Under the pieces are notes generated by a model. That model saw only the letters and a program-made list of their open reading frames with translations, did not search any database and was not told the DNA's origin. DNA of 64,000 nucleotides from Ostrea edulis (taxonomy: Eukaryota): NCBI RefSeq assembly GCF_947568905.1, contig NC_079164.1:92318001-92382000 (forward strand), read 5' to 3'. Within the stretch, counting starts at the first letter, position 1, and the number at the start of each line of letters is the position of its first letter. A program made the position numbers and the translations under genes. Positions 21,907-58,791 of this stretch are shown here, one piece after another.

Positions 21907-22061
21907 NNNNNNNNNNNNNNNNNNNNNNNNNNNNNNNNNNNNNNNNNNNNNNNNNNNNNNNNNNNNNNNNNNNNNNNNNNNNNNNNNNNNNNNNNNNNNN
22001 NNNNNNNNNNNNNNNNNNNNNNNNNNNNNNNNNNNNNNNNNNNNNNNNNNNNNNNNNNNNN
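21907..22061. other. Assembly gap (155 N)
   Basis: Run of N. Confidence 1.
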
Positions 22062-49201: not shown

Positions 49202-52200
49202 TCAATGATGAAGATATTAAGCGAGTCTTTGAATTTCGCGGGAGAATATCATGAAAATTGATTATTTATATATAATTAGCACCTTACAATTAATGATTTA
49301 TTATAATTCGCTACATGGATACATATTTCTAATGTATGGTAATACGAAATTGTCCAAGAAGAAACGATATGTAGACCTTCAACTGAAGGCTAAGAATACA
49401 GACAAGGGCAGTTCGAAATGGAGGATATATTAAATACCGATAGTTAGTCCGCTACCTCACTGTCCCATATATATACATGTACGTATAACGAGTTACATTA
49501 CACGGTGTTATGTATATACAAACAGGACCGACTACATGTAGACTAGTACTGATGCGTTGTATGTGGTACGATGTGTACGATATGACGACAGTGTTTTGTA
49601 CGTGATTTACACGTTGACGAACTAGGAAACTTGGCAAGGTTTTACTGATGGCAGTGTTTTCAGGTTCTCTAATTCTACAATGATTATATAAAATCACTGT
49701 AAAGATTTTATGTATTCCTTAGTATTGTAGACACCGTGTGATAAGTTACTGCGTGGTGGGGTACAATAATCGCACAAAAGTAGCACCCGAAACATGCATG
49801 TCATTTCATAAAATGTTTTCTTTTGTCCTTTGATAATTTTCAATATCAAAAAGTTAGGTCTAAGGTCTAAACTAAATATTTTTTATAATACTGACTGATG
49901 CTGATTAATGCTAATTAAAAGTTCTTGATATCTATCTGTTTTGTTAGTGTACTAATTACTTTTTATATATATATATTCTTTTGTATTCATATGTAAATTT
50001 CTCTCCTAGATAATCAATCACGTGGTAGCAGCGCCTATCGATAAATTGATCACTAACGCCGCAGTAGAGAGTGAGTAATAATTTTGGACTTATCAATATT
50101 TATGGTTGAAAGTGGAAAAACTGTGTTAATTTCCACTCAATATAGTTAAGGTTAATTAATAACCAAAGAAAATGTGTATGTTGCCACCTTTTTAAAGATG
50201 CCAGATATACAAAAACAGAAGTATATGTTAACATCAGAAAATCACACATTTTCGTTATACGAAAGATTTAAAATAGATAAAAACTTGTTGAAATGACAAA
50301 TTTTAAATGTCAACAGTGTATAAAAACCTACTAATTCATAAATATGTATAAATTAAATTGTGGATATTAGGGAATTCATTATCTCATAGACATGCATTAG
50401 AAGAAATACCAGCATAGGAGTTTTTGCCTTGACAACATTTTTTGAATTATAAATAATTGATTATCTATGGAAAATAGTTAACTTTTTTTATTCAGTAAAT
50501 AAAATTCCTTTCAAAGATATATTTCTATCATGCACAAAGTTTAATTTAATAAAGATTTTTGCAAAAACATATGACATCACAGAAGGATCGATCAACCTTA
50601 AGCCAGTTTCCGTTGATGCATGGGTTTTTTGGTTTTTTTTCAATCATCAATGAACAACAAACGCATATAAATCTCGCAAATTGACATAACTGCTTTTGTT
50701 TCAGCGACTTCATTTGACATCGTTGCAAATGTCAGCACTAAAACCCTCCGTCTGGAGCTGGACATATTGATAAATCTTGACGACTATGTGGAAACACAAA
50801 GAGAACTGTGAGTATAGATAGAGGGGGCGGGGGCGGGGGCATCGATCATATTAATAAAGTAAATCTCAGAAGAATTCGTTCATTCCAGCCATATCAAGAA
50901 TAGTCATTTATATCAATGTAATATGTTAAAGAGAAGGAAAAAAACTTCTAGAAGCAAGGGTCCCTTGGGCCACAGTGCTCACCTGAACCAGTTGTTCAAA
51001 CAGGGATAAAACTAGGATCTTTCATTCTTATTTATATACTTTCTATTAAGATACTTTCATATTAGTTAGACTAACTGTAATCTTGTGGTTTTTTGAAAGA
51101 TAATTCTTTAGTATTGCTAAACAAGATACCATGTCCCTGTTAAATAGTAGTGCTACACAAGATACCATGCCTCTGTTAAATAGTGCTACACAAGATACCA
51201 TGCCCCTGTTAAATAGTGCTGCACAAGATATCATGCCTCTGTTAAATAGTAGTGCTACACAAGATACCATGCCTCTGTTAAATAGTGCTACACAAGATAC
51301 CATGCCCCTGTTAAATAGTGCTGCACAAGATATCATGCCTCTGTTAAATAGTAGTGCTACACAAGATACCATGCCTCTGTTAAATAGTGCTACACAAGAT
51401 ACCATGCCCCTGTTAAATAGTAGTGTTACACAAGATACCATGCCTCTGTTAAATAGTGCTACACAAGATACCATGCCTCTGTTAAATAGTGCTGCACAAG
51501 ATATCATGCCTCTGTTAAATAGTAGTGCTACACAAGATACCATGCCTCTGTTAAATAGTGCTACACAAGATACCATGCCCCTGTTAAATAGTAGTGTTAC
51601 ACAAGATACCATGCCTCTGTTAAATAGTGCTACACAAGATACCATGCCTCTGTTAAATAGTGCTGCACAAGATATCATGCCTCTGTTAAATAGTAGTGCT
51701 ACACAAGATACCATGCCCCTGTTAAATAGTAGTGCTAAACAAGATACCATGCCTCTGTTAAATAGTGCTACACAAGATACCATGCCTCTGTTAAATAGTG
51801 CTACACAAGATACCATGCCCCTGTGAATTAAATAGTAGTGCTACACAAGATACCATGCCTCTGTTAAATAGTAGTGCTACACAAGATACCATGCCTCTGT
51901 TAAATAGTGCTACACAAGATACCATGCCTCTGTTAAATAGTAGTGTTACACAAGATACCATGCCTCTGTTAAATAGTGCTGCACAAGATACCATGCCCCT
52001 GTTAAATAGTAGTGTTACACAAGATATCATGCCTCTGTTAAATAGTGCTACACAAGATATCATGCCTCTGTTAAATAGTAGTGCTACACAAGATACCATG
52101 CCTCTGTTAAATAGTAGTGTTACACAAGATATCATGCCCCTGTTAAATAGTGCTACACAAGATATCATGCCTCTGTTAAATAGTGCTACACACGATACCA

Positions 52201-55200
52201 TGTCTCTGTTAAATAGTGCTACACAAGATATCATGCCTCTGTTAAATAGTGCTGCACAAGATATCATGCCTCTGTTAAATAGTAGTGCTACACAAGATAC
52301 CATGCCTCTGTTAAATAGTGCTACACAAGATACCATGCCCCTGTTAAATAGTAGTGTTACACAAGATACCATGCCTCTGTTAAATAGTGCTACACAAGAT
52401 ACCATGCCTCTGTTAAATAGTGCTGCACAAGATATCATGCCTCTGTTAAATAGTAGTGCTACACAAGATACCATGCCCCTGTTAAATAGTAGTGCTAAAC
52501 AAGATACCATGCCTCTGTTAAATAGTGCTACACAAGATACCATGCCTCTGTTAAATAGTGCTACACAAGATACCATGCCCCTGTGAATTAAATAGTAGTG
52601 CTACACAAGATACCATGCCTCTGTTAAATAGTAGTGCTACACAAGATACCATGCCTCTGTTAAATAGTGCTACACAAGATACCATGCCTCTGTTAAATAG
52701 TAGTGTTACACAAGATACCATGCCTCTGTTAAATAGTGCTGCACAAGATACCATGCCCCTGTTAAATAGTAGTGTTACACAAGATATCATGCCTCTGTTA
52801 AATAGTGCTACACAAGATATCATGCCTCTGTTAAATAGTAGTGCTACACAAGATACCATGCCTCTGTTAAATAGTAGTGTTACACAAGATATCATGCCCC
52901 TGTTAAATAGTGCTACACAAGATATCATGCCTCTGTTAAATAGTGCTACACACGATACCATGTCTCTGTTAAATAGTGCTACACAAGATATCATGCCTCT
53001 GTTAAATAGTGCTACACAAGATATCATGCCTCTGTTAAATAGTAGTGCTACACAAGATACCATGCCTCTGTTAAATAGTAGTGTTACACAAGATATCATG
53101 CCCCTGTTAAATAGTGCTACACAAGATACCATGCCTCTGTTAAATAGTGCTACACACGATACCATGTCTCTGTTAAATAGTGCTACACAAGATATCATGC
53201 CTCTGTTAAATAGTGCTACACAAGATATCATGCCTCTGTTAAATAGTGCTACACAAGATACCATGCCTCTGTTAAATAGTGCTACACAAGATATCATGCC
53301 TCTGTTAAATAGTAGTGTTACACAAGATGCCATGCCCCTGTTAAATAGTGCTACACACGATACCATGTCTCTGTTAAATAGTGCTACACAATATACCATG
53401 CTTCTGTTAAATAGTGCTACACAAGATATCATGCCTCTGTTAAATAGTGCTACACAAGATATCATGCCTCTGTTAAATAGTAGTGCTACACAAGATATCA
53501 TGCCTCTGTTAAATAGTAGTGTTACACAAGATATCATGCCCCTGTTAAATAGTGCTACACAAGATACCATGCCTCTGTTAAATAGTGCTACACACGATAC
53601 CATGCCTCTGTTAAATAGTGTTACACAAGATACCATGCCCCTGTTGTGGCCCCGCTCTATCCACTGAGGGACGTAGTTTACGCAAACCTGACACTACAGT
53701 GCATGACGATGCGAACATGTTACATAATTAATTGTGGGTTTTTTTCAGTACTTTAGAAGGCCGTATAAGGAAGAAAAGGAAGGCGACTAGAAACAAGAGA
53801 AAACGCTGGCCAAACAGAGAGGTCCCATACATCGTTACAAATGATTTCAGTACGTAAAAAATCATAACCCGGATCATTTCGTTTGTCCATAATGTCTTTG
53901 GCTGTTGTTTTTCCATGAATTTTTACAGAGATAAGTTAGTCAAGAAGGTTTCATATTAGAAGTCGTTCATAGTCAGGATGATGATATTTGCTTTGCTTTT
54001 GTTGTTGTAAAAAAGTTGTACCCACCCCCGAAAGAGGTACTCACTTTTACAATTATAAGAAATCGGGGGGGGGGGGGGGGGGTAGTACGCGTAAAACGTT
54101 GCAGTACTATACAAACCTTGATTTATATCCAATTATGCGAAATTCCTTATTTAAATTCGAAAATCTTAATATCAATTTGCAAAAATTTTGATTTATATTC
54201 GTTAATCTTGATATTTATAATTATATGCGAAAATGAATATAAATATAAATCAAAATTTTTGCACATAGATATCAAGATTATCGAATATAAATCAAAATAT
54301 TTGCATATAGATATCAAGATTATTGTATATACATCAAAAATTTTAAAGATTATTGAATATATATATCGAAATTTTCGCATAAAAATATTAAGATTATCGA
54401 ATATTACTCAAGATTTTCGCATATGAATAACTAGATTATCGAATATAAATCAAGATTTGTATAATATTTCAACGTTTTAGCCTTAGCTTTCTAACATAAT
54501 AGGATGTATATTTTTAAAAACTAATGGTTGCATCATCATGAAAATAGGTGTATATTTTCAAAAGGTTTACATCACACGAAAAGCATCAAGTATTTATTTT
54601 CAAAATATTCAGCACACCTTTGTTTCCTAATATACGTCAAGAAAACTGTAAAATCTCAACCCAATTATTAGTATTTTCCCTGAACCAGTAGTACATTTAT
54701 TGATATAAGTAAACATTTCTTTTGACTTGATTTGTTCATTTATTAATTTGATGTACACGTTGATATTGAATGCTACATTCCAGTTTAAACAAATACCGTG
54801 GTAAACAATTAAGAGCGAACAAAAAAATAAATGAATAAAAAAAATCGCTAAAAATTAATGCTGATTTTGTTGCCTTTCTCCAGGTTCTGGGGACAGGGTT
54901 CAGATTAAAGCTGCCGTGAATGAATGGAGTAAGTACACGTGTCTAAACATCAGGGAGGCCACATACAGGGACGCCAACAAAGTTCGATTCCAAAACGGAA
55001 ACGGGTAAGGCGATGTATGGGTGTAGGTTTGACGTGTTCGGTGGAGAATCTTCCTCGGTAATGTGATAGATGGGTGTAGGTATGGCGTGTTCGATGGATA
55101 ATCTTCCTCGGTAATGTGATAGATGGGTGTAGGTATGTCGTGTTCGGTGGAGAATCTTCCTCGGTAATGTGATAGATGGGTGTAGGTATGACGTGTTTTG

Positions 55201-58200
55201 TGGAGAATCTTCCTCGGTAATGTGATAGATAGAGTAGGTATGAAGTGTTCAGTGGAGAATCTTCCTCGGTAATGTGATAGATGGGTGTAAGTATGACGTG
55301 GAGAATCGTCCTCGGTAATGTGATAGATGGGTGTAAGTATGACGTGGAGAATCTTCCTCGGTAATGTGATAGATGGGTGTAGGTATGTCGTGTTCGGTGG
55401 AGAATCTTCCTCGGTAATGTGATAGATGGGTGTAGGTATGTCGTGTTCGGTGGAGAATCTTCCTCGGTAATGTGATAGATGGGTGTAGGTATGTCGTGTT
55501 CGGTGGAGAATCTTCCTCGGTAATGTGATAGATGGGTGTAGGTATGTCGTGTTCGGTGGAGAATCTTCCTCGGTAATGTGATAGATGGGTGTAGGTATGA
55601 CGTGTTTTGTGGAGAATCTTCCCCGGTAATGTGATAGATGGGTGTAGGTATGAAGTGTTCAGTGGAGAATCTTTCTCGGCAATGAGGGATTTGTTCTTCA
55701 CCTGCAGTAAAATGAAGTCGATGTGATGACCGTGAATAGGGTTCAGCACATGACAATTCTGACTTTACATTGTAGGTGCTCATCTTATATCGGTATGGTC
55801 AAAGGAGAACAAGAGTTAAATCTGGGGAAGAACTGTCGAGTGGTAAGTTATCGATTGTTGAGAAAATTACACAGTTTTTAAGATGTAACTTTAATAATGA
55901 AATGATATTTTTATATGTTTTGTAATAGTATTTGATGTACGCAAATACACCTTTCTACACCTTCATCAGTGCAACCATCTGCAGACAACAGCGATAAAAA
56001 CTTAGATAAAAATAAAACAAAATAAATACCACGAACATCAATTTCTTGTAGTTTTGAATTGTTTGGTCCTGTTATTAACCTATTGAAAAACAGAGTTTCT
56101 TTTTTTTTTTTTTAAAGAAAAGAGTTATAGTGCATGAACTCGGGCACGCCATCGGATTCCAACATGAGCAGTCTCGACCGGATAGGGACGCATTTGTAGA
56201 AATCGTCAAGGAAAACGTACCATCAGCACTGGCGTATAACTTTGATAGGCTCCCGGAAAGCAAGATTGAACATTTCAATGTGGATTACGATTATCGGAGC
56301 ATTATGCACTATAGCTCAAAGGTGTGTTGAAATTTAATAGGGGTATGGACTGAAATGAGATGTTTCACATGCATGATTTGAACTACACTGTATTTTTCTC
56401 TTATTTTTCTTTTAAAAACTTAGATATATTATGCCTCATCTCTGATTATGAACGCATTCCTACAAGCAGATCTGTTGTATTTAATTTATCCGTTTGGATT
56501 TCTAATGCCAGGCTTTTTCTACAAGCAGATCTGTTGTATTTAATTTATCCGTTTGGATTTCTAATGCCAGGCTTTTTCTACAAGCAGATCTGTTGTATTT
56601 AATTTATCCGTTTGGATTTCTAATGCTAGGCTTTTTCTACAAGCAGATCTGTTGTATTTAATTTATCCGTTTGGATTTCTAATGCCAAGCTTTTTCTACA
56701 AGCAGATCTGTTGTATTTAATTTATCCGTTTGGATTTCTAATGCCAGGCTTTTTCTACAAGCAGATCTGTTGTATTTAATTTATCCGTTTGGATTTCTAA
56801 TGCTAGGCTTTTTCTACAAGCAGATCTGTTGTATTTAATTTATCCGTTTGGATTTCTAATGCCAGGCTTTTTCTACAAGCAGATCTGTTGTATTTAATTT
56901 ATCCGTTTGGATTTCTAATGCCAAGCTTTTTCTACAAGCAGATCTGTTGTATTTAATTTATCCGTTTGGACTTCTAATGCCAGGCTTTTTCTACAAGCAG
57001 ATCTGTTGTATTTAATTTATCCGTTTGGATTTCTAATGCTAGGCTTTTTCTACAAGCAGATCTGTTGTATTTAATTTATCCGTTTGGATTTCTAATGCCA
57101 GGCTTTTTCTACAAGCAGATCTGTTGTATTTAATTTATCCGTTTGGATTTCTAATGCCAAGCTTTTTCTACAAGCAGATCTGTTGTATTTAATTTATCCG
57201 TTTGGATTTCTAATGCCAGGCTTTTTCTACAAGCAGATCTGTTGTATTTAATTTATCCGTTTGGATTTCTAATGTCAGGCTTTTTCTACAAGCAGATCTG
57301 TTGTGTTTAATTTATCCGTTTGGATTTCTAATGTCAGGCTTTTTCTACAAGCGGATCTGTTGTGTTTAATTTATCCGTTTGGATTTCTAATGCCAGGCTT
57401 TTTCTACAAATGGAATGATAACTGTGAGGACGAAGGATCCACAGTATCAGAACGTCATTGGGAACGCTCTTGGTCTCAGCTTCCGGGATATCAAACTGGC
57501 TAACCGGATGTACAGCTGTAACGGTAAAGCAAACGGAAACAGTTTATAAAATAGATCTAACTAGCCAACATTGCTACATCGCCCTTTTAACGACATTAAC
57601 AAGTTTTTAAATGTTTCAAATATTTTTCATTGTAACGATGTCGATAAGAATGTGAATTTCTGGATTTGGTTATATTTGGAAGCTACAGAACTGTAGTTCT
57701 ATAGGGAAAAACTTATCTGTTCCAAAAAGAAGAGAGAAGCCCATTATTTTCTTTGAAAGCTATGATTCTGCAACTGATTTGTCGACTGTCAATCTTAAGT
57801 ACAGAGGATAAACAGTTCTACACTCTATATTCTACAGAAAACTGTTCAGCGGTCAAGTGTCCTGGGCAAGGTTTCCAAGCTCAGGACTGTCAGTGTTACT
57901 GTCCATCTGATGACACGGCAAACCCACTGAGGGTGTGTGACGAAAGCGATGTCGTCACCGACAAACCAACCGTAACCTCAACACACCGGACCACCCCAGC
58001 AACGGAAACGCCCGTGTCAGGTGAATTTGTCAACGAACCAAACTTTCCTTGATACAACTTTTATCAATTCACGGTTTAAACATCTTATAAATCGTTTATC
58101 AAAACTTCACAGGCAAAATAATGAGAACATGTTGCCAGTGAAAAGATCTCTGTACATAAATGTATGTAATAAAATTACTGAAAAATACAATTGAATTTCT

Positions 58201-58791
58201 TTTACAATACAGAAAGCTGTCAAAACGGACACAACTACTGTGATTTCTGGTCCAAGAGGGGACACTGCGATTCCTCTCCCGGATTCATGAATCTCTATTG
58301 TAAAAAGGCCTGTGGAAGATGCACAGCAGGTAAATGAAGAAAGACATGTGCTCAACATACTTTTTCGATAGGGTATAAAATTTGATGTAGATAGTTCATG
58401 TAAATTTTGACTTTTGTGCTTATGACAGAGACTGATGTTTGTGAGGATGTGGGGCAACACTGCTCTTTCTGGAAGGATCAGGGCTACTGTTCCATGAACA
58501 CGATGCCCTACATGCAGAGGAACTGTCGCAAAACCTGTGAATTCTGTAAATCCGATGAAGGTGTGTATTGCCTTTTTTCATTGAAAAGTAAATTCTAATT
58601 TTTCGAATTTTTTTTTAAATTTTCATTTATTGGGTTTTTCCCCCAGTATCTATGAAAATAACTTTATATTGATTTCAGGTAACGGCGAGGGGATTGCAGA
58701 ACCTTCGAATTCAGCCAGTGATAACACGGCAAAAGCTGTCTTTATTGTAATGTTGAGTGTAGTGAAGTTATTCCTTACTGGGATTTTCTAA
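47829..58791 (+). CDS. Astacin (M12A) zinc metalloprotease with EGF-like/Cys segment, Thr-rich linker, 2 ShKT domains and hydrophobic (GPI-like) tail, ~456 aa
   Basis: Exons 47829-47870, 50010-50070, 50705-50807, 53749-53849, 54884-55004, 55776-55842, 56118-56321, 57397-57523, 57838-58020, 58213-58329, 58429-58560, 58679-58791; all phases fit. Signal [21 protein letters not shown], prodomain ELDIL, furin-type RKKR, W...[20 protein letters not shown] Met-turn, two 6-Cys ShKT exons. Exons 1-3 are less certain than the rest. Confidence 0.9.
48012..48284 (-). mobile_element. 5'-truncated SINE with Meta and Deu-like domains (BivaMD-like)
   Basis: Minus strand CCCCCTTGCTTGTCGTAAGAGGCGACTAAA (Meta, from memory), then AAACCGAGGTCCCGTG...TAAAGATCCC (Deu) and an (AATC)n tail; in astacin intron 1. 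Confidence 0.75.
49017..49117. mobile_element. ~101-bp TA-flanked mini-MITE beside a (TA)n run
   Basis: GGTAAAAAATAAAAATGAATCACGAAGACGTT / AACGTCTTCGTGTTTCATTTTTATTTTTTACC inverted arms. Confidence 0.7.
50952..53740 (-). mobile_element. Reverse-oriented Helentron remnant hosting a 2.5-kb minisatellite
   Basis: 50952-50995 is the reverse complement of a HINE 3' end (GGGCCACAGTGCTCACCTG). 53636-53725 resembles reverse-complement Cg170-like sequence (CCCCTGTTGTGGCCCC versus the unit at ~25850). Confidence 0.5.
51117..53642. repeat. 33/36-bp minisatellite (ACACAAGATACCATGCCTCTGTTAAATAG[TAG]TGCT) in astacin intron 3
   Basis: About 73 units; source of six long repetitive ORFs; contains a 760-bp-offset block duplication. 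Confidence 0.95.
54086..54479. mobile_element. Foldback MITE with ~37-bp TIRs and AT-rich internal repeats
   Basis: TAAAACGTTGCAGTACTATACAAACCTTGATTTATAT / ATATAAATCAAGATTTGTATAATATTTCAACGTTTTA. Confidence 0.75.
55005..55685. repeat. 53-bp minisatellite starting at the astacin exon 5 donor
   Basis: About 13 units of GGTAATGTGATAGATGGGTGTAGGTATGTCGTGTTCGGTGGAGAATCTTCCTC. Confidence 0.95.
56460..57408. repeat. 59-bp minisatellite, 16 units, containing the astacin exon 8 acceptor junction
   Basis: Unit AAGCAGATCTGTTGTATTTAATTTATCCGTTTGGATTTCTAATGCCAG|GCTTTTTCTAC; the last AG (57395-57396) is the real acceptor. Confidence 0.95.

What the first reader, a model, noticed from the sequence alone, without database searches (positions are those of the whole stretch)
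56460..57408. Sixteen tandem copies of a functional 3' splice junction
The 59-bp unit is 47 nt of intron end plus the first 12 coding nt of exon 8 (GCTTTTTCTACA = AFST). There are 16 junction positions at 59-bp spacing from 56510 to 57395: 12 decoys keep AG (CCAG/CTAG/TCAG), 3 have AG mutated to AA (units 4, 8 and 12, a 4-unit period) and the last is real. Any decoy shifts the frame or reaches a stop, truncating the protease domain, so splicing must skip 12 near-identical upstream sites. With the cases at 32372, 35722 and 55005, this suggests a recurrent process that amplifies splice junctions into minisatellites. Possible consequences are array-length-dependent mis-splicing/NMD or intron gain by junction duplication (inference). 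I do not know of a description of this in bivalves.
Basis: partly seen in the sequence, partly recalled or inferred. Interest (0 to 1): 0.82.

Follow-up and report, generated by a model that had tools for sequence, protein, structure and literature searches.

The report
Oyster intron repeat copying a splice acceptor
A 59-base repeat inside an intron of an oyster protease gene has copied the gene's own intron-exon boundary 16 times; this type of repeat is already known (human F7), other genes of the same family in this genome have it too, and whether the 15 spare copies disturb splicing could not be tested.

Summary
Observation confirmed, with corrections. Window 56460-57409 holds a 59-bp x 16.1 tandem array, about 99% identical to its consensus. 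Its last unit spans the true acceptor (AG 57395-96) of an astacin-metalloprotease exon (57397-57523).

All 15 upstream copies give a premature stop if used. Six are identical to the real site from -32 to +13. The three "AA" units still carry an AG shifted by one base. Every unit also holds two more AGs behind the exon-derived pyrimidine run.

The array is real. DNA contigs from four studies hold both flanks, and repeat depths match the reference copy number. The unit occurs nowhere else in the 895-Mb genome.

It is bounded by a CTACAA microhomology. The intron was about 185 nt before expansion, which fits slippage duplication followed by unequal exchange.

No RNA data could be reached, so use of the last acceptor rests on protein-profile continuity and conserved intron position. 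Decoy silence is inferred.

Recurrence is real. Among 19 paralogous astacin loci I found five more independent junction-spanning arrays. That is 2.4-3 times a uniform-seed expectation (P about 0.02-0.08), so suggestive only. The scan has noted such arrays elsewhere in this genome.

Closest known: the human F7 IVS7 minisatellite, which is on the donor side. Verdict: new member of a known kind, moderate interest.

The parts
56118..56321 (+). Upstream astacin exon carrying the zinc motif [12 protein letters not shown] and the Met-turn SIMHY. It ends in phase 0 before the GT at 56322-56323.
   Evidence: Pfam PF01400 positions 81-145, E 1.9e-24. Sequence read.
56322..56459 (+). Unique 5' part of the intron (138 nt). 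With one 47-nt unit tail it gives an ancestral intron of about 185 nt.
   Evidence: Paralogue introns at this position are often about 100-400 nt, with some near 700-3,260 nt.
56460..57409 (+). 59-bp x 16.1 minisatellite. Each unit holds branch-point candidates, a weak pyrimidine tract, the acceptor-type AG and 13 exon-type bases.
   Evidence: The unit is unique to this locus in the genome. It is present at similar copy number in four DNA runs.
56460..56465 (+). Left boundary microhomology CTACAA.
   Evidence: The same hexamer lies at the right boundary, 59 bp x 16 away.
57404..57409 (+). Right boundary microhomology CTACAA, inside the exon.
56510..57337 (+). Span of the 15 decoy acceptor positions, one every 59 bp. 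Twelve have AG in register and three (units 4, 8, 12) have AG shifted +1. Decoys 1, 2, 5, 7, 11 and 13 are identical to the true site over -32..+13.
57395..57396 (+). Authentic acceptor AG. This is inferred from protein-profile continuity and a conserved intron position, not from RNA.
57397..57523 (+). Downstream astacin exon (AFSTNG...MYSCN), the last part of the protease domain. A donor GT follows at 57524-57525.
   Evidence: Pfam PF01400 positions 147-189, E 1.1e-7, starting at residue 1 of the exon.
54865..55005 (+). Earlier astacin exon of the same gene. Its donor (GT from 55006) is followed by a 53-bp x 12.9 array (55017-55684). The units carry donor-like CG|GTAATG and resemble the true junction.
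58182..58595 (+). Two ShK-domain exons of the same gene (58182-58334 and 58404-58595). They lie downstream of any decoy-induced stop, so decoy transcripts would be NMD candidates.
   Evidence: Pfam PF01549, E 6e-10 and 1.5e-9.

Best explanation
This is an ordinary intronic minisatellite that happened to be seeded across an intron-exon boundary. A slippage-type tandem duplication between two CTACAA hexamers 59 bp apart copied the last 46-47 intron bases plus the first 13 exon bases. One hexamer lay in a then roughly 185-nt intron and the other at the start of the exon. Unequal exchange then expanded the duplicate to 16 near-identical copies, partly in blocks of four units. That lengthened the intron to 1,075 nt.

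Only the last, exon-proximal copy is followed by a real exon, with a donor 127 nt downstream. I infer that exon definition selects that copy. This mirrors the human F7 intron-7 minisatellite, where only the exon-proximal donor is used. Decoy use, if any, gives premature stops upstream of later exon junctions and would be cleared by NMD.

The array is probably neutral or slightly harmful, not a device.

Shown: the anatomy, the gene identity, the uniqueness of the unit, its presence in several individuals, and recurrence in paralogues. Inferred: the birth mechanism, which acceptor is used, and the silence of the decoys.
For: - Array anatomy and boundaries.
- Astacin profile runs 81-145 in the upstream exon and 147-189 from the first residue of the downstream exon.
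- Paralogues and other molluscan homologues break at the same place: HY...|GT then AG|AF(S/T).
- Paralogue introns here are often about 100-400 nt.
- The unit is found only at this locus in 895 Mb.
- Both flanks and multi-copy unitigs appear in four independent DNA runs at depth ratios matching the reference.
- The one exon-8 SNP seen (57438 T>C) falls at a codon third position and is synonymous by my own reading of the exon-8 frame (GAT to GAC).
- The same type of microhomology-bounded junction array occurs on the donor side in paralogues L023, L025 and L026, and on the acceptor side in L018, L019 and L021.
- In the F7 precedent, identical pseudo-sites are functional but only the exon-proximal one is used (PMC1557585).
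Against: - There is no RNA evidence at all. No RNA run held the stretch.
- Six decoys share every intronic signal with the true site, because the nearest upstream AG forces the branch point into the repeated part.
- Classical duplicated-site experiments gave conflicting answers on which acceptor wins (discussion in PMC1557585).
- 'First come, first served' co-transcriptional splicing would favour upstream decoys.
- Predicted RNA structure gives the true site no advantage.
- Three of six inferred mutation events among the units fall in the CCAG tetranucleotide, and a fourth removes the AG nearest upstream of the true site. That could mean selection against decoy use, so decoys may not be silent.
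Confidence: 0.62

Rival explanations
1. The decoys are used at an appreciable rate. The array then acts as a copy-number-dependent attenuator of this protease gene through frameshifted transcripts and NMD.
For: - Six decoys are identical to the true site over -32..+13, and all 15 keep an AG within one base.
- Every decoy gives a premature stop upstream of later exons.
- Variation among units clusters on acceptor positions, as expected if weakening decoys is favoured.
Against: - No RNA data.
- In the F7 analogue, identical pseudo-sites are not used even at low efficiency (PMC1557585).
- Copy number looks similar in four samples, so a variable dial is not evident.
- The clustering rests on six events and a post hoc window (about P 0.05 with sites defined beforehand).
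Confidence: 0.2
2. A junction-biased mutational process in this genome preferentially seeds minisatellites on splice junctions. On this view the array is one product of that process and not a chance placement.
For: - In 13 unbiased, non-redundant paralogue loci (48 arrays, 52 known junctions), 5 arrays span a junction against 1.68 expected from uniformly placed seeds, P = 0.023.
- Four arrays abut or span junctions in this window.
- Many first-reader notes of the same kind exist across this genome. These are unchecked.
Against: - The excess is 2.4-3 fold on tiny counts. P is 0.08 if the degenerate L022 case is dropped.
- Array density near exons may simply exceed the 10-kb average.
- Arrays cover 16% of these loci, so junctions are not over-covered relative to random points.
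- The boundaries here are ordinary microhomologies, not splice consensus.
- An earlier follow-up of the scan (s1-301758) also judged geometry sufficient.
Confidence: 0.15
3. The allele is functionally dead or dying. Upstream decoys capture most splicing, and the gene is tolerated as a null because the genome has dozens of astacin paralogues.
For: - The genome-wide Astacin search returned 80 exon-level matches, so redundancy is plausible.
- Upstream sites are transcribed first.
- The intron grew about six-fold.
Against: - All identified exons are open and keep the catalytic motifs.
- The only exon-8 SNP seen is synonymous by my own reading of the frame.
- Older junction arrays persist in paralogues whose exons are also intact.
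Confidence: 0.08
4. The array is an assembly artefact.
For: Short-read contigs cannot cross it.
Against: - Both flanks enter the repeat in four independent runs.
- Repeat unitig depth is 5-12x flank depth, matching reference multiplicities of 6-9.
- Unit variants 14-16 are recovered as separate unitigs.
Confidence: 0.02

Closest known systems
Human F7 intron-7 37-bp VNTR minisatellite (Borensztajn et al. 2006, PMC1557585)
   Same: An intronic minisatellite whose terminal unit spans the exon-intron boundary. The authentic splice site therefore sits beside a row of pseudo-sites identical in sequence. It is the model for how position decides site choice, since only the exon-proximal site is used.
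   Different: F7 repeats the donor (5 to 9 copies) and the authentic site is the first unit. Here the acceptor is repeated 16 times and the authentic site is the last unit. F7 usage is shown by 50 minigene constructs, whereas nothing is shown at RNA level here. F7 is a mammalian gene and this one is from an oyster.
Internal tandem repeats at exon-intron boundaries of human genes in segmental duplications (De Grassi and Ciccarelli 2009, PMC2812944)
   Same: Tandem repeats that straddle exon-intron boundaries and can alter splicing. They occur in recently expanded gene families.
   Different: Those cases were found through paralogue differences and often create new introns or alternative transcripts. 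Here an existing, conserved intron is only lengthened, and no alternative transcript is documented.
Intron gain by tandem duplication of an AGGT site (Rogers model; Hellsten et al. 2011, PMC3265369; potato RdRp, PMC4974935)
   Same: A short intragenic tandem duplication multiplies splice signals. The excess copy can be spliced out without changing the protein.
   Different: No new intron arises here. The duplicated segment holds an acceptor only, and the intron position predates the array because paralogues share it.
AG-scanning and AG-exclusion-zone rule for 3' splice-site choice, and NAGNAG tandem acceptors (from my own knowledge of the splicing literature; not looked up here)
   Same: Several AGs compete downstream of a branch point. 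The first suitable AG after the branch point is normally taken.
   Different: Here each AG comes with its own copy of the branch-point region at 59-bp spacing. Scanning from one branch point therefore cannot explain the choice among units.

Membership tests
Junction-spanning intronic minisatellite (F7 IVS7 type) | Head-to-tail array of 10-100-bp units lying in an intron | tested here: met
   59 bp x 16.1 copies, 97% matches, within the intron 56322-57396.
Junction-spanning intronic minisatellite (F7 IVS7 type) | The terminal unit spans the exon-intron boundary, so exon bases are part of every unit | tested here: met
   13 exon bases are present in all 16 units. The exon start is fixed by Pfam continuity 145 to 147.
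Junction-spanning intronic minisatellite (F7 IVS7 type) | [quoted passage not shown] | tested here: met
   Six of 15 are identical over -32..+13. The rest differ at one to three positions.
Junction-spanning intronic minisatellite (F7 IVS7 type) | Only the exon-proximal site is used in vivo | not testable with these tools
   No RNA run held the stretch. The word search returned only genomic ORF fragments.
Junction-spanning intronic minisatellite (F7 IVS7 type) | Copy number varies between individuals (VNTR) | tested here: inconclusive
   Depth ratios in four runs (5-12) are close to the reference multiplicities (6-9). Contigs cannot size the array.
Astacin metallopeptidase (M12A), the host gene | Zinc motif HExxHxxGxxHE and Met-turn SxMHY; Pfam PF01400 above cut-off | tested here: met
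   [12 protein letters not shown] and SIMHY lie in exon 56118-56321. Scores are 86.8 and 32.1 bits against a cut-off of 22.5. Two ShK exons lie downstream.
Intron gain by tandem duplication (Rogers model) | The intron is absent from relatives and is bounded by the two copies of a duplicated AGGT | tested here: not met
   The same phase-0 intron position occurs in paralogues and other homologues. The unit contains no donor.

The most novel reading that the evidence does not exclude
In this oyster genome, minisatellites that copy a gene's own splice junction are a regular feature and not rarities. Roughly one in ten sampled astacin junctions has one, several times the uniform expectation. That would imply one of two things. 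Either a junction-biased duplication process exists, or the splicing machinery picks the exon-proximal site among up to 16 identical candidates so reliably that such arrays are effectively neutral. Residual decoy use would make array length a heritable dial on expression.
Probability: 0.15. Interest if true: 0.65.

Novelty: new member of a known kind. Interest (0 to 1): 0.38.

Why it matters
The array is a natural acceptor-side mirror of the F7 donor array. Sixteen acceptors share branch-point region, pyrimidine tract, AG and the first 13 exon bases. Any discrimination must therefore come from position and downstream exon context.

That makes it a clean test substrate for how 3' splice sites are chosen (exon definition, first-come-first-served, or scanning). 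It also bears on how much mis-splicing a gene tolerates.

The paralogue survey shows that such arrays are common in this genome. This matters practically for gene prediction and RNA-seq junction calling in bivalves, because repeated junctions invite wrong exon boundaries. It also matters for understanding how short introns grow.

Tried and rejected
1. RNA evidence. The single run search (kind any) listed only DNA holders. The one read-laying run therefore went to four DNA runs.

2. Looking for transcript-derived protein fragments that cross the junction. A word search with the upstream exon returned 63 hits. The seven whose sequences I read were all genomic ORFs that run into the intron.

3. 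Joining the exons into a spliced model to search for the annotated full-length protein.

4. The big representative search was not used. The protein family was already clear.

5. RNA secondary structure as the discriminator. The true acceptor is predicted no more accessible than the decoys (unpaired 0.41 against 0.52-0.61). Rejected.

6. A dispersed repeat or transposon origin of the unit. Rejected, since the unit occurs only at this locus.

7. A larger unbiased sample.

8. Recursive splicing. Rejected, because a decoy join does not regenerate a donor.

9. Intron gain. Rejected, because the intron position is conserved.

The N run at 21907-22061 was left untouched.

Full report
**The observation**

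Tandem Repeats Finder reports one array at 56460-57409: period 59, 16.1 copies, 97% matches and no indels. A motif scan finds the exon-start motif 16 times at exact 59-bp spacing. The first exon-type base lies at 56512, 56571 and so on up to 57397.

At the position homologous to the true AG:
- seven decoys read CCAG;
- three read CTAG (units 3, 6, 10);
- two read TCAG (units 14, 15);
- three read CCAA (units 4, 8, 12).

In those last three the next base is G, so the string is CCAAG|C. An AG survives one base downstream.

The exonic stretch shared by all units is 13 nt. Each unit also carries two more AGs (CAAG and GCAG) directly after the pyrimidine run that derives from the exon start. The array holds 47 AG dinucleotides in total.

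Only 11 letters in 944 differ from the consensus. The 4-unit period is visible but weak.

**The host gene**

- The upstream exon (56118-56321) carries [12 protein letters not shown] and SIMHY. It matches Pfam Astacin positions 81-145 (E 1.9e-24).
- The downstream exon (57397-57523) matches positions 147-189, starting at its very first residue.
- Earlier exons at 54865-55005 and about 55776-55845 match positions 19-56 and 46-79.
- Two ShK-domain exons follow at 58182-58334 and 58404-58595.

The gene encodes a secreted-type astacin-ShK protease. The profile continuity fixes the acceptor at AG 57395-96.

The intron position is old:
- Genomic ORF fragments of homologues from many sources stop at HY...|V(gt).
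- 42 of the 80 exon-level Astacin matches in this genome end at the same profile position.
- Paralogue exons restart with AG|AF(T/S) or AG|SFG.

The number "exon 8" is unverified.

**Is the array real?**

No RNA holder was on offer. I laid contigs of four DNA runs from four different studies on 56000-57700.
- All four runs hold the right flank entering the repeat, and two of them (X5 and X9) also hold the left flank.
- Unitigs inside the array have 5-12 times the depth of the flanks. The same words occur 6-9 times in the reference.
- The variant units 14-16 are recovered as single-copy unitigs.

The array therefore exists, at about the reference size, in independent animals. No contig joined the flanks with fewer units, though contigs drop rare alleles. 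The unit is found nowhere else in the 895-Mb assembly, so it is not a dispersed element.

**Origin**

The array begins with CTACAA (56460-65), directly after unique intron sequence. It ends with the CTACAA that lies in the exon (57404-09). Two hexamers 59 bp apart are the classic substrate for a slippage duplication.

Collapsing the array leaves an intron of 138 + 47 = 185 nt. That is within the range of many paralogue introns at this position, often about 100-400 nt. It is now 1,075 nt.

This step is inferred, but the same anatomy recurs. In paralogue L025 the 66-bp donor array is bounded by AGTCA, which is shared between the exon and positions +4 to +8 of the donor.

**Consequences for splicing**

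Use of any decoy adds 59 x m bases. The result is a stop 26 codons (decoy 15), 74 codons (decoy 14) or 49 codons (all others) past the junction. These stops lie upstream of later exon junctions, so such transcripts would be NMD substrates.

Six decoys are identical to the true site from -32 to +13. The nearest upstream AG lies about 45 nt before the true acceptor. By the AG-exclusion logic of 3' site choice (established knowledge, not tested here), the branch point serving the true site must lie inside the repeated part. Candidates are TTAAT with the A at -28, TTTAT with the A at -24, and CTAAT with the A at -7.

Each decoy is therefore a complete module. Only position and sequence beyond +13 can distinguish the true site. 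Predicted RNA structure does not help, since the true site is if anything less accessible.

My best inference is exon definition: the true site is the only one with a donor 127 nt downstream and a real exon between. The human F7 intron-7 minisatellite is the precedent. There the identical donor pseudo-sites are functional but only the exon-proximal one is used (PMC1557585). The same paper notes that early experiments with duplicated acceptors disagreed, so this inference is not safe.

One hint against full silence comes from the six inferred mutation events among the units. Three fall in the CCAG tetranucleotide, and one turns GCAG into GCGG in the last unit, removing the AG nearest upstream of the true site. 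With splice-critical positions defined beforehand this is about P 0.05. All three CCAG changes are also C-to-T transitions within CCAGG, so a mutational hotspot is an alternative.

**Recurrence**

- 32370-33317 (48 bp x 20) ends in a diverged copy that supplies the acceptor of a GLUT-type exon.
- 35724-35853 (43 bp x 3) repeats the pyrimidine tract up to the AG.
- 55017-55684 (53 bp x 12.9) follows the donor at 55005/6, with units that resemble the junction.

This window was chosen because of them, so I took a sample not selected for arrays. Junction-spanning arrays appear in:
- L018, L019 and L021: 83-bp units, acceptor of the zinc-motif exon, about 80% identity, shared by duplicated genes;
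- L022: 20-bp units starting on a donor, degenerate;
- L023: 39 bp x 2.2, donor;
- L025 and L026: 66 bp x 4-4.5, donor, in frame;
- L025 again: 39 bp x 3.8, donor of the last protease exon.

I removed near-duplicate loci, the window itself and L026. That leaves 13 loci with 48 arrays and 52 known junctions. A model that drops one seed unit per array uniformly on the array-collapsed locus expects 1.68 spanning arrays. I observe 5 (P = 0.023), or 4 without L022 (P = 0.08).

Arrays cover 16% of these loci, so junctions are not covered more often than random points. For the array in question, a random 59-bp duplication touching a 185-nt intron spans the acceptor with probability 0.24, and either junction with probability 0.48.

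I conclude that recurrence is a fact and that selection does not purge such arrays quickly. A junction-seeking process is possible but not demonstrated. Other notes of this scan describe the same pattern elsewhere in this genome. One follow-up (s1-301758) reached the geometric explanation. These are leads, not evidence.

**Comparison and verdict**

The feature meets the structural criteria of a junction-spanning intronic minisatellite of the F7 type, on the acceptor side. The in-vivo criterion could not be tested.

It is not intron gain by duplication (Hellsten et al., PMC3265369), because the intron predates the array. Repeats at exon-intron boundaries that alter splicing are also described for human genes in segmental duplications (PMC2812944).

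I class it as a new member of a known kind. It is well documented structurally, untested functionally, and of moderate interest as a natural substrate for 3' splice-site choice.

Noticed in passing
L025:6127-6392 and L026:6127-6420 (G000:C8 near 13,306,900 and 52,688,600): A 66-bp array (x4 in L025, x4.5 in L026) repeats the last 63 exon bases (PYDYRSILQYHLT) plus the donor. The donor GTAAGT is re-formed at each unit boundary. The period is a multiple of three and the frame stays open through all copies, so use of a later donor would insert 22-residue repeats into the protease Met-turn region.
   Followed up: partly
L025:9594-9741: A second junction array in the same paralogue, 39 bp x 3.8. 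It repeats the last 18 bases of the final protease exon plus the donor GTGAGT.
   Followed up: partly
L023:6176-6260: A 39-bp x 2.2 array repeats an exon end (SLLQYELS) plus the donor GTGAGT. A third, decayed copy follows.
   Followed up: partly
L018:5584-6017, and the same in L019 and L021: An older 83-bp array (about 80% identity, roughly five copies) whose unit spans the acceptor of the zinc-motif exon and includes about 11 exon bases. Three duplicated genes share it, so such arrays can persist through gene duplication.
   Followed up: partly
window 56460-57409, unit positions 49-52: Eight of the 11 variant letters in the array lie in the CCAG of the acceptor copies. All are C-to-T transitions (on one strand or the other) within the pentamer CCAGG. 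This points either to selection against decoys or to a deamination hotspot.
   Followed up: partly
window 51109-53645: A 33-bp x 74 array lies upstream of the astacin-domain exons of the same gene, apparently in an intron. It has no stop codons in long stretches of all three frames (ORFs of 240-370 codons reading ...[11 protein letters not shown]...). The frame hops between stretches, so it is probably non-coding, but gene callers may take it for an exon.
   Followed up: no
window 32370-33317 and 35724-35853: Two acceptor-side arrays in a sugar-transporter (GLUT-like) gene. Their last unit ends within a few bases of the true acceptor, and the decoys carry a pyrimidine tract plus CAG or AAG.
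   Followed up: partly
L027 (G000:C4:26441203-26441790, minus strand): An intronless astacin paralogue in a 763-codon open frame with C-terminal Cys-rich extensions. All other family members sampled here have the split protease domain.
   Followed up: no
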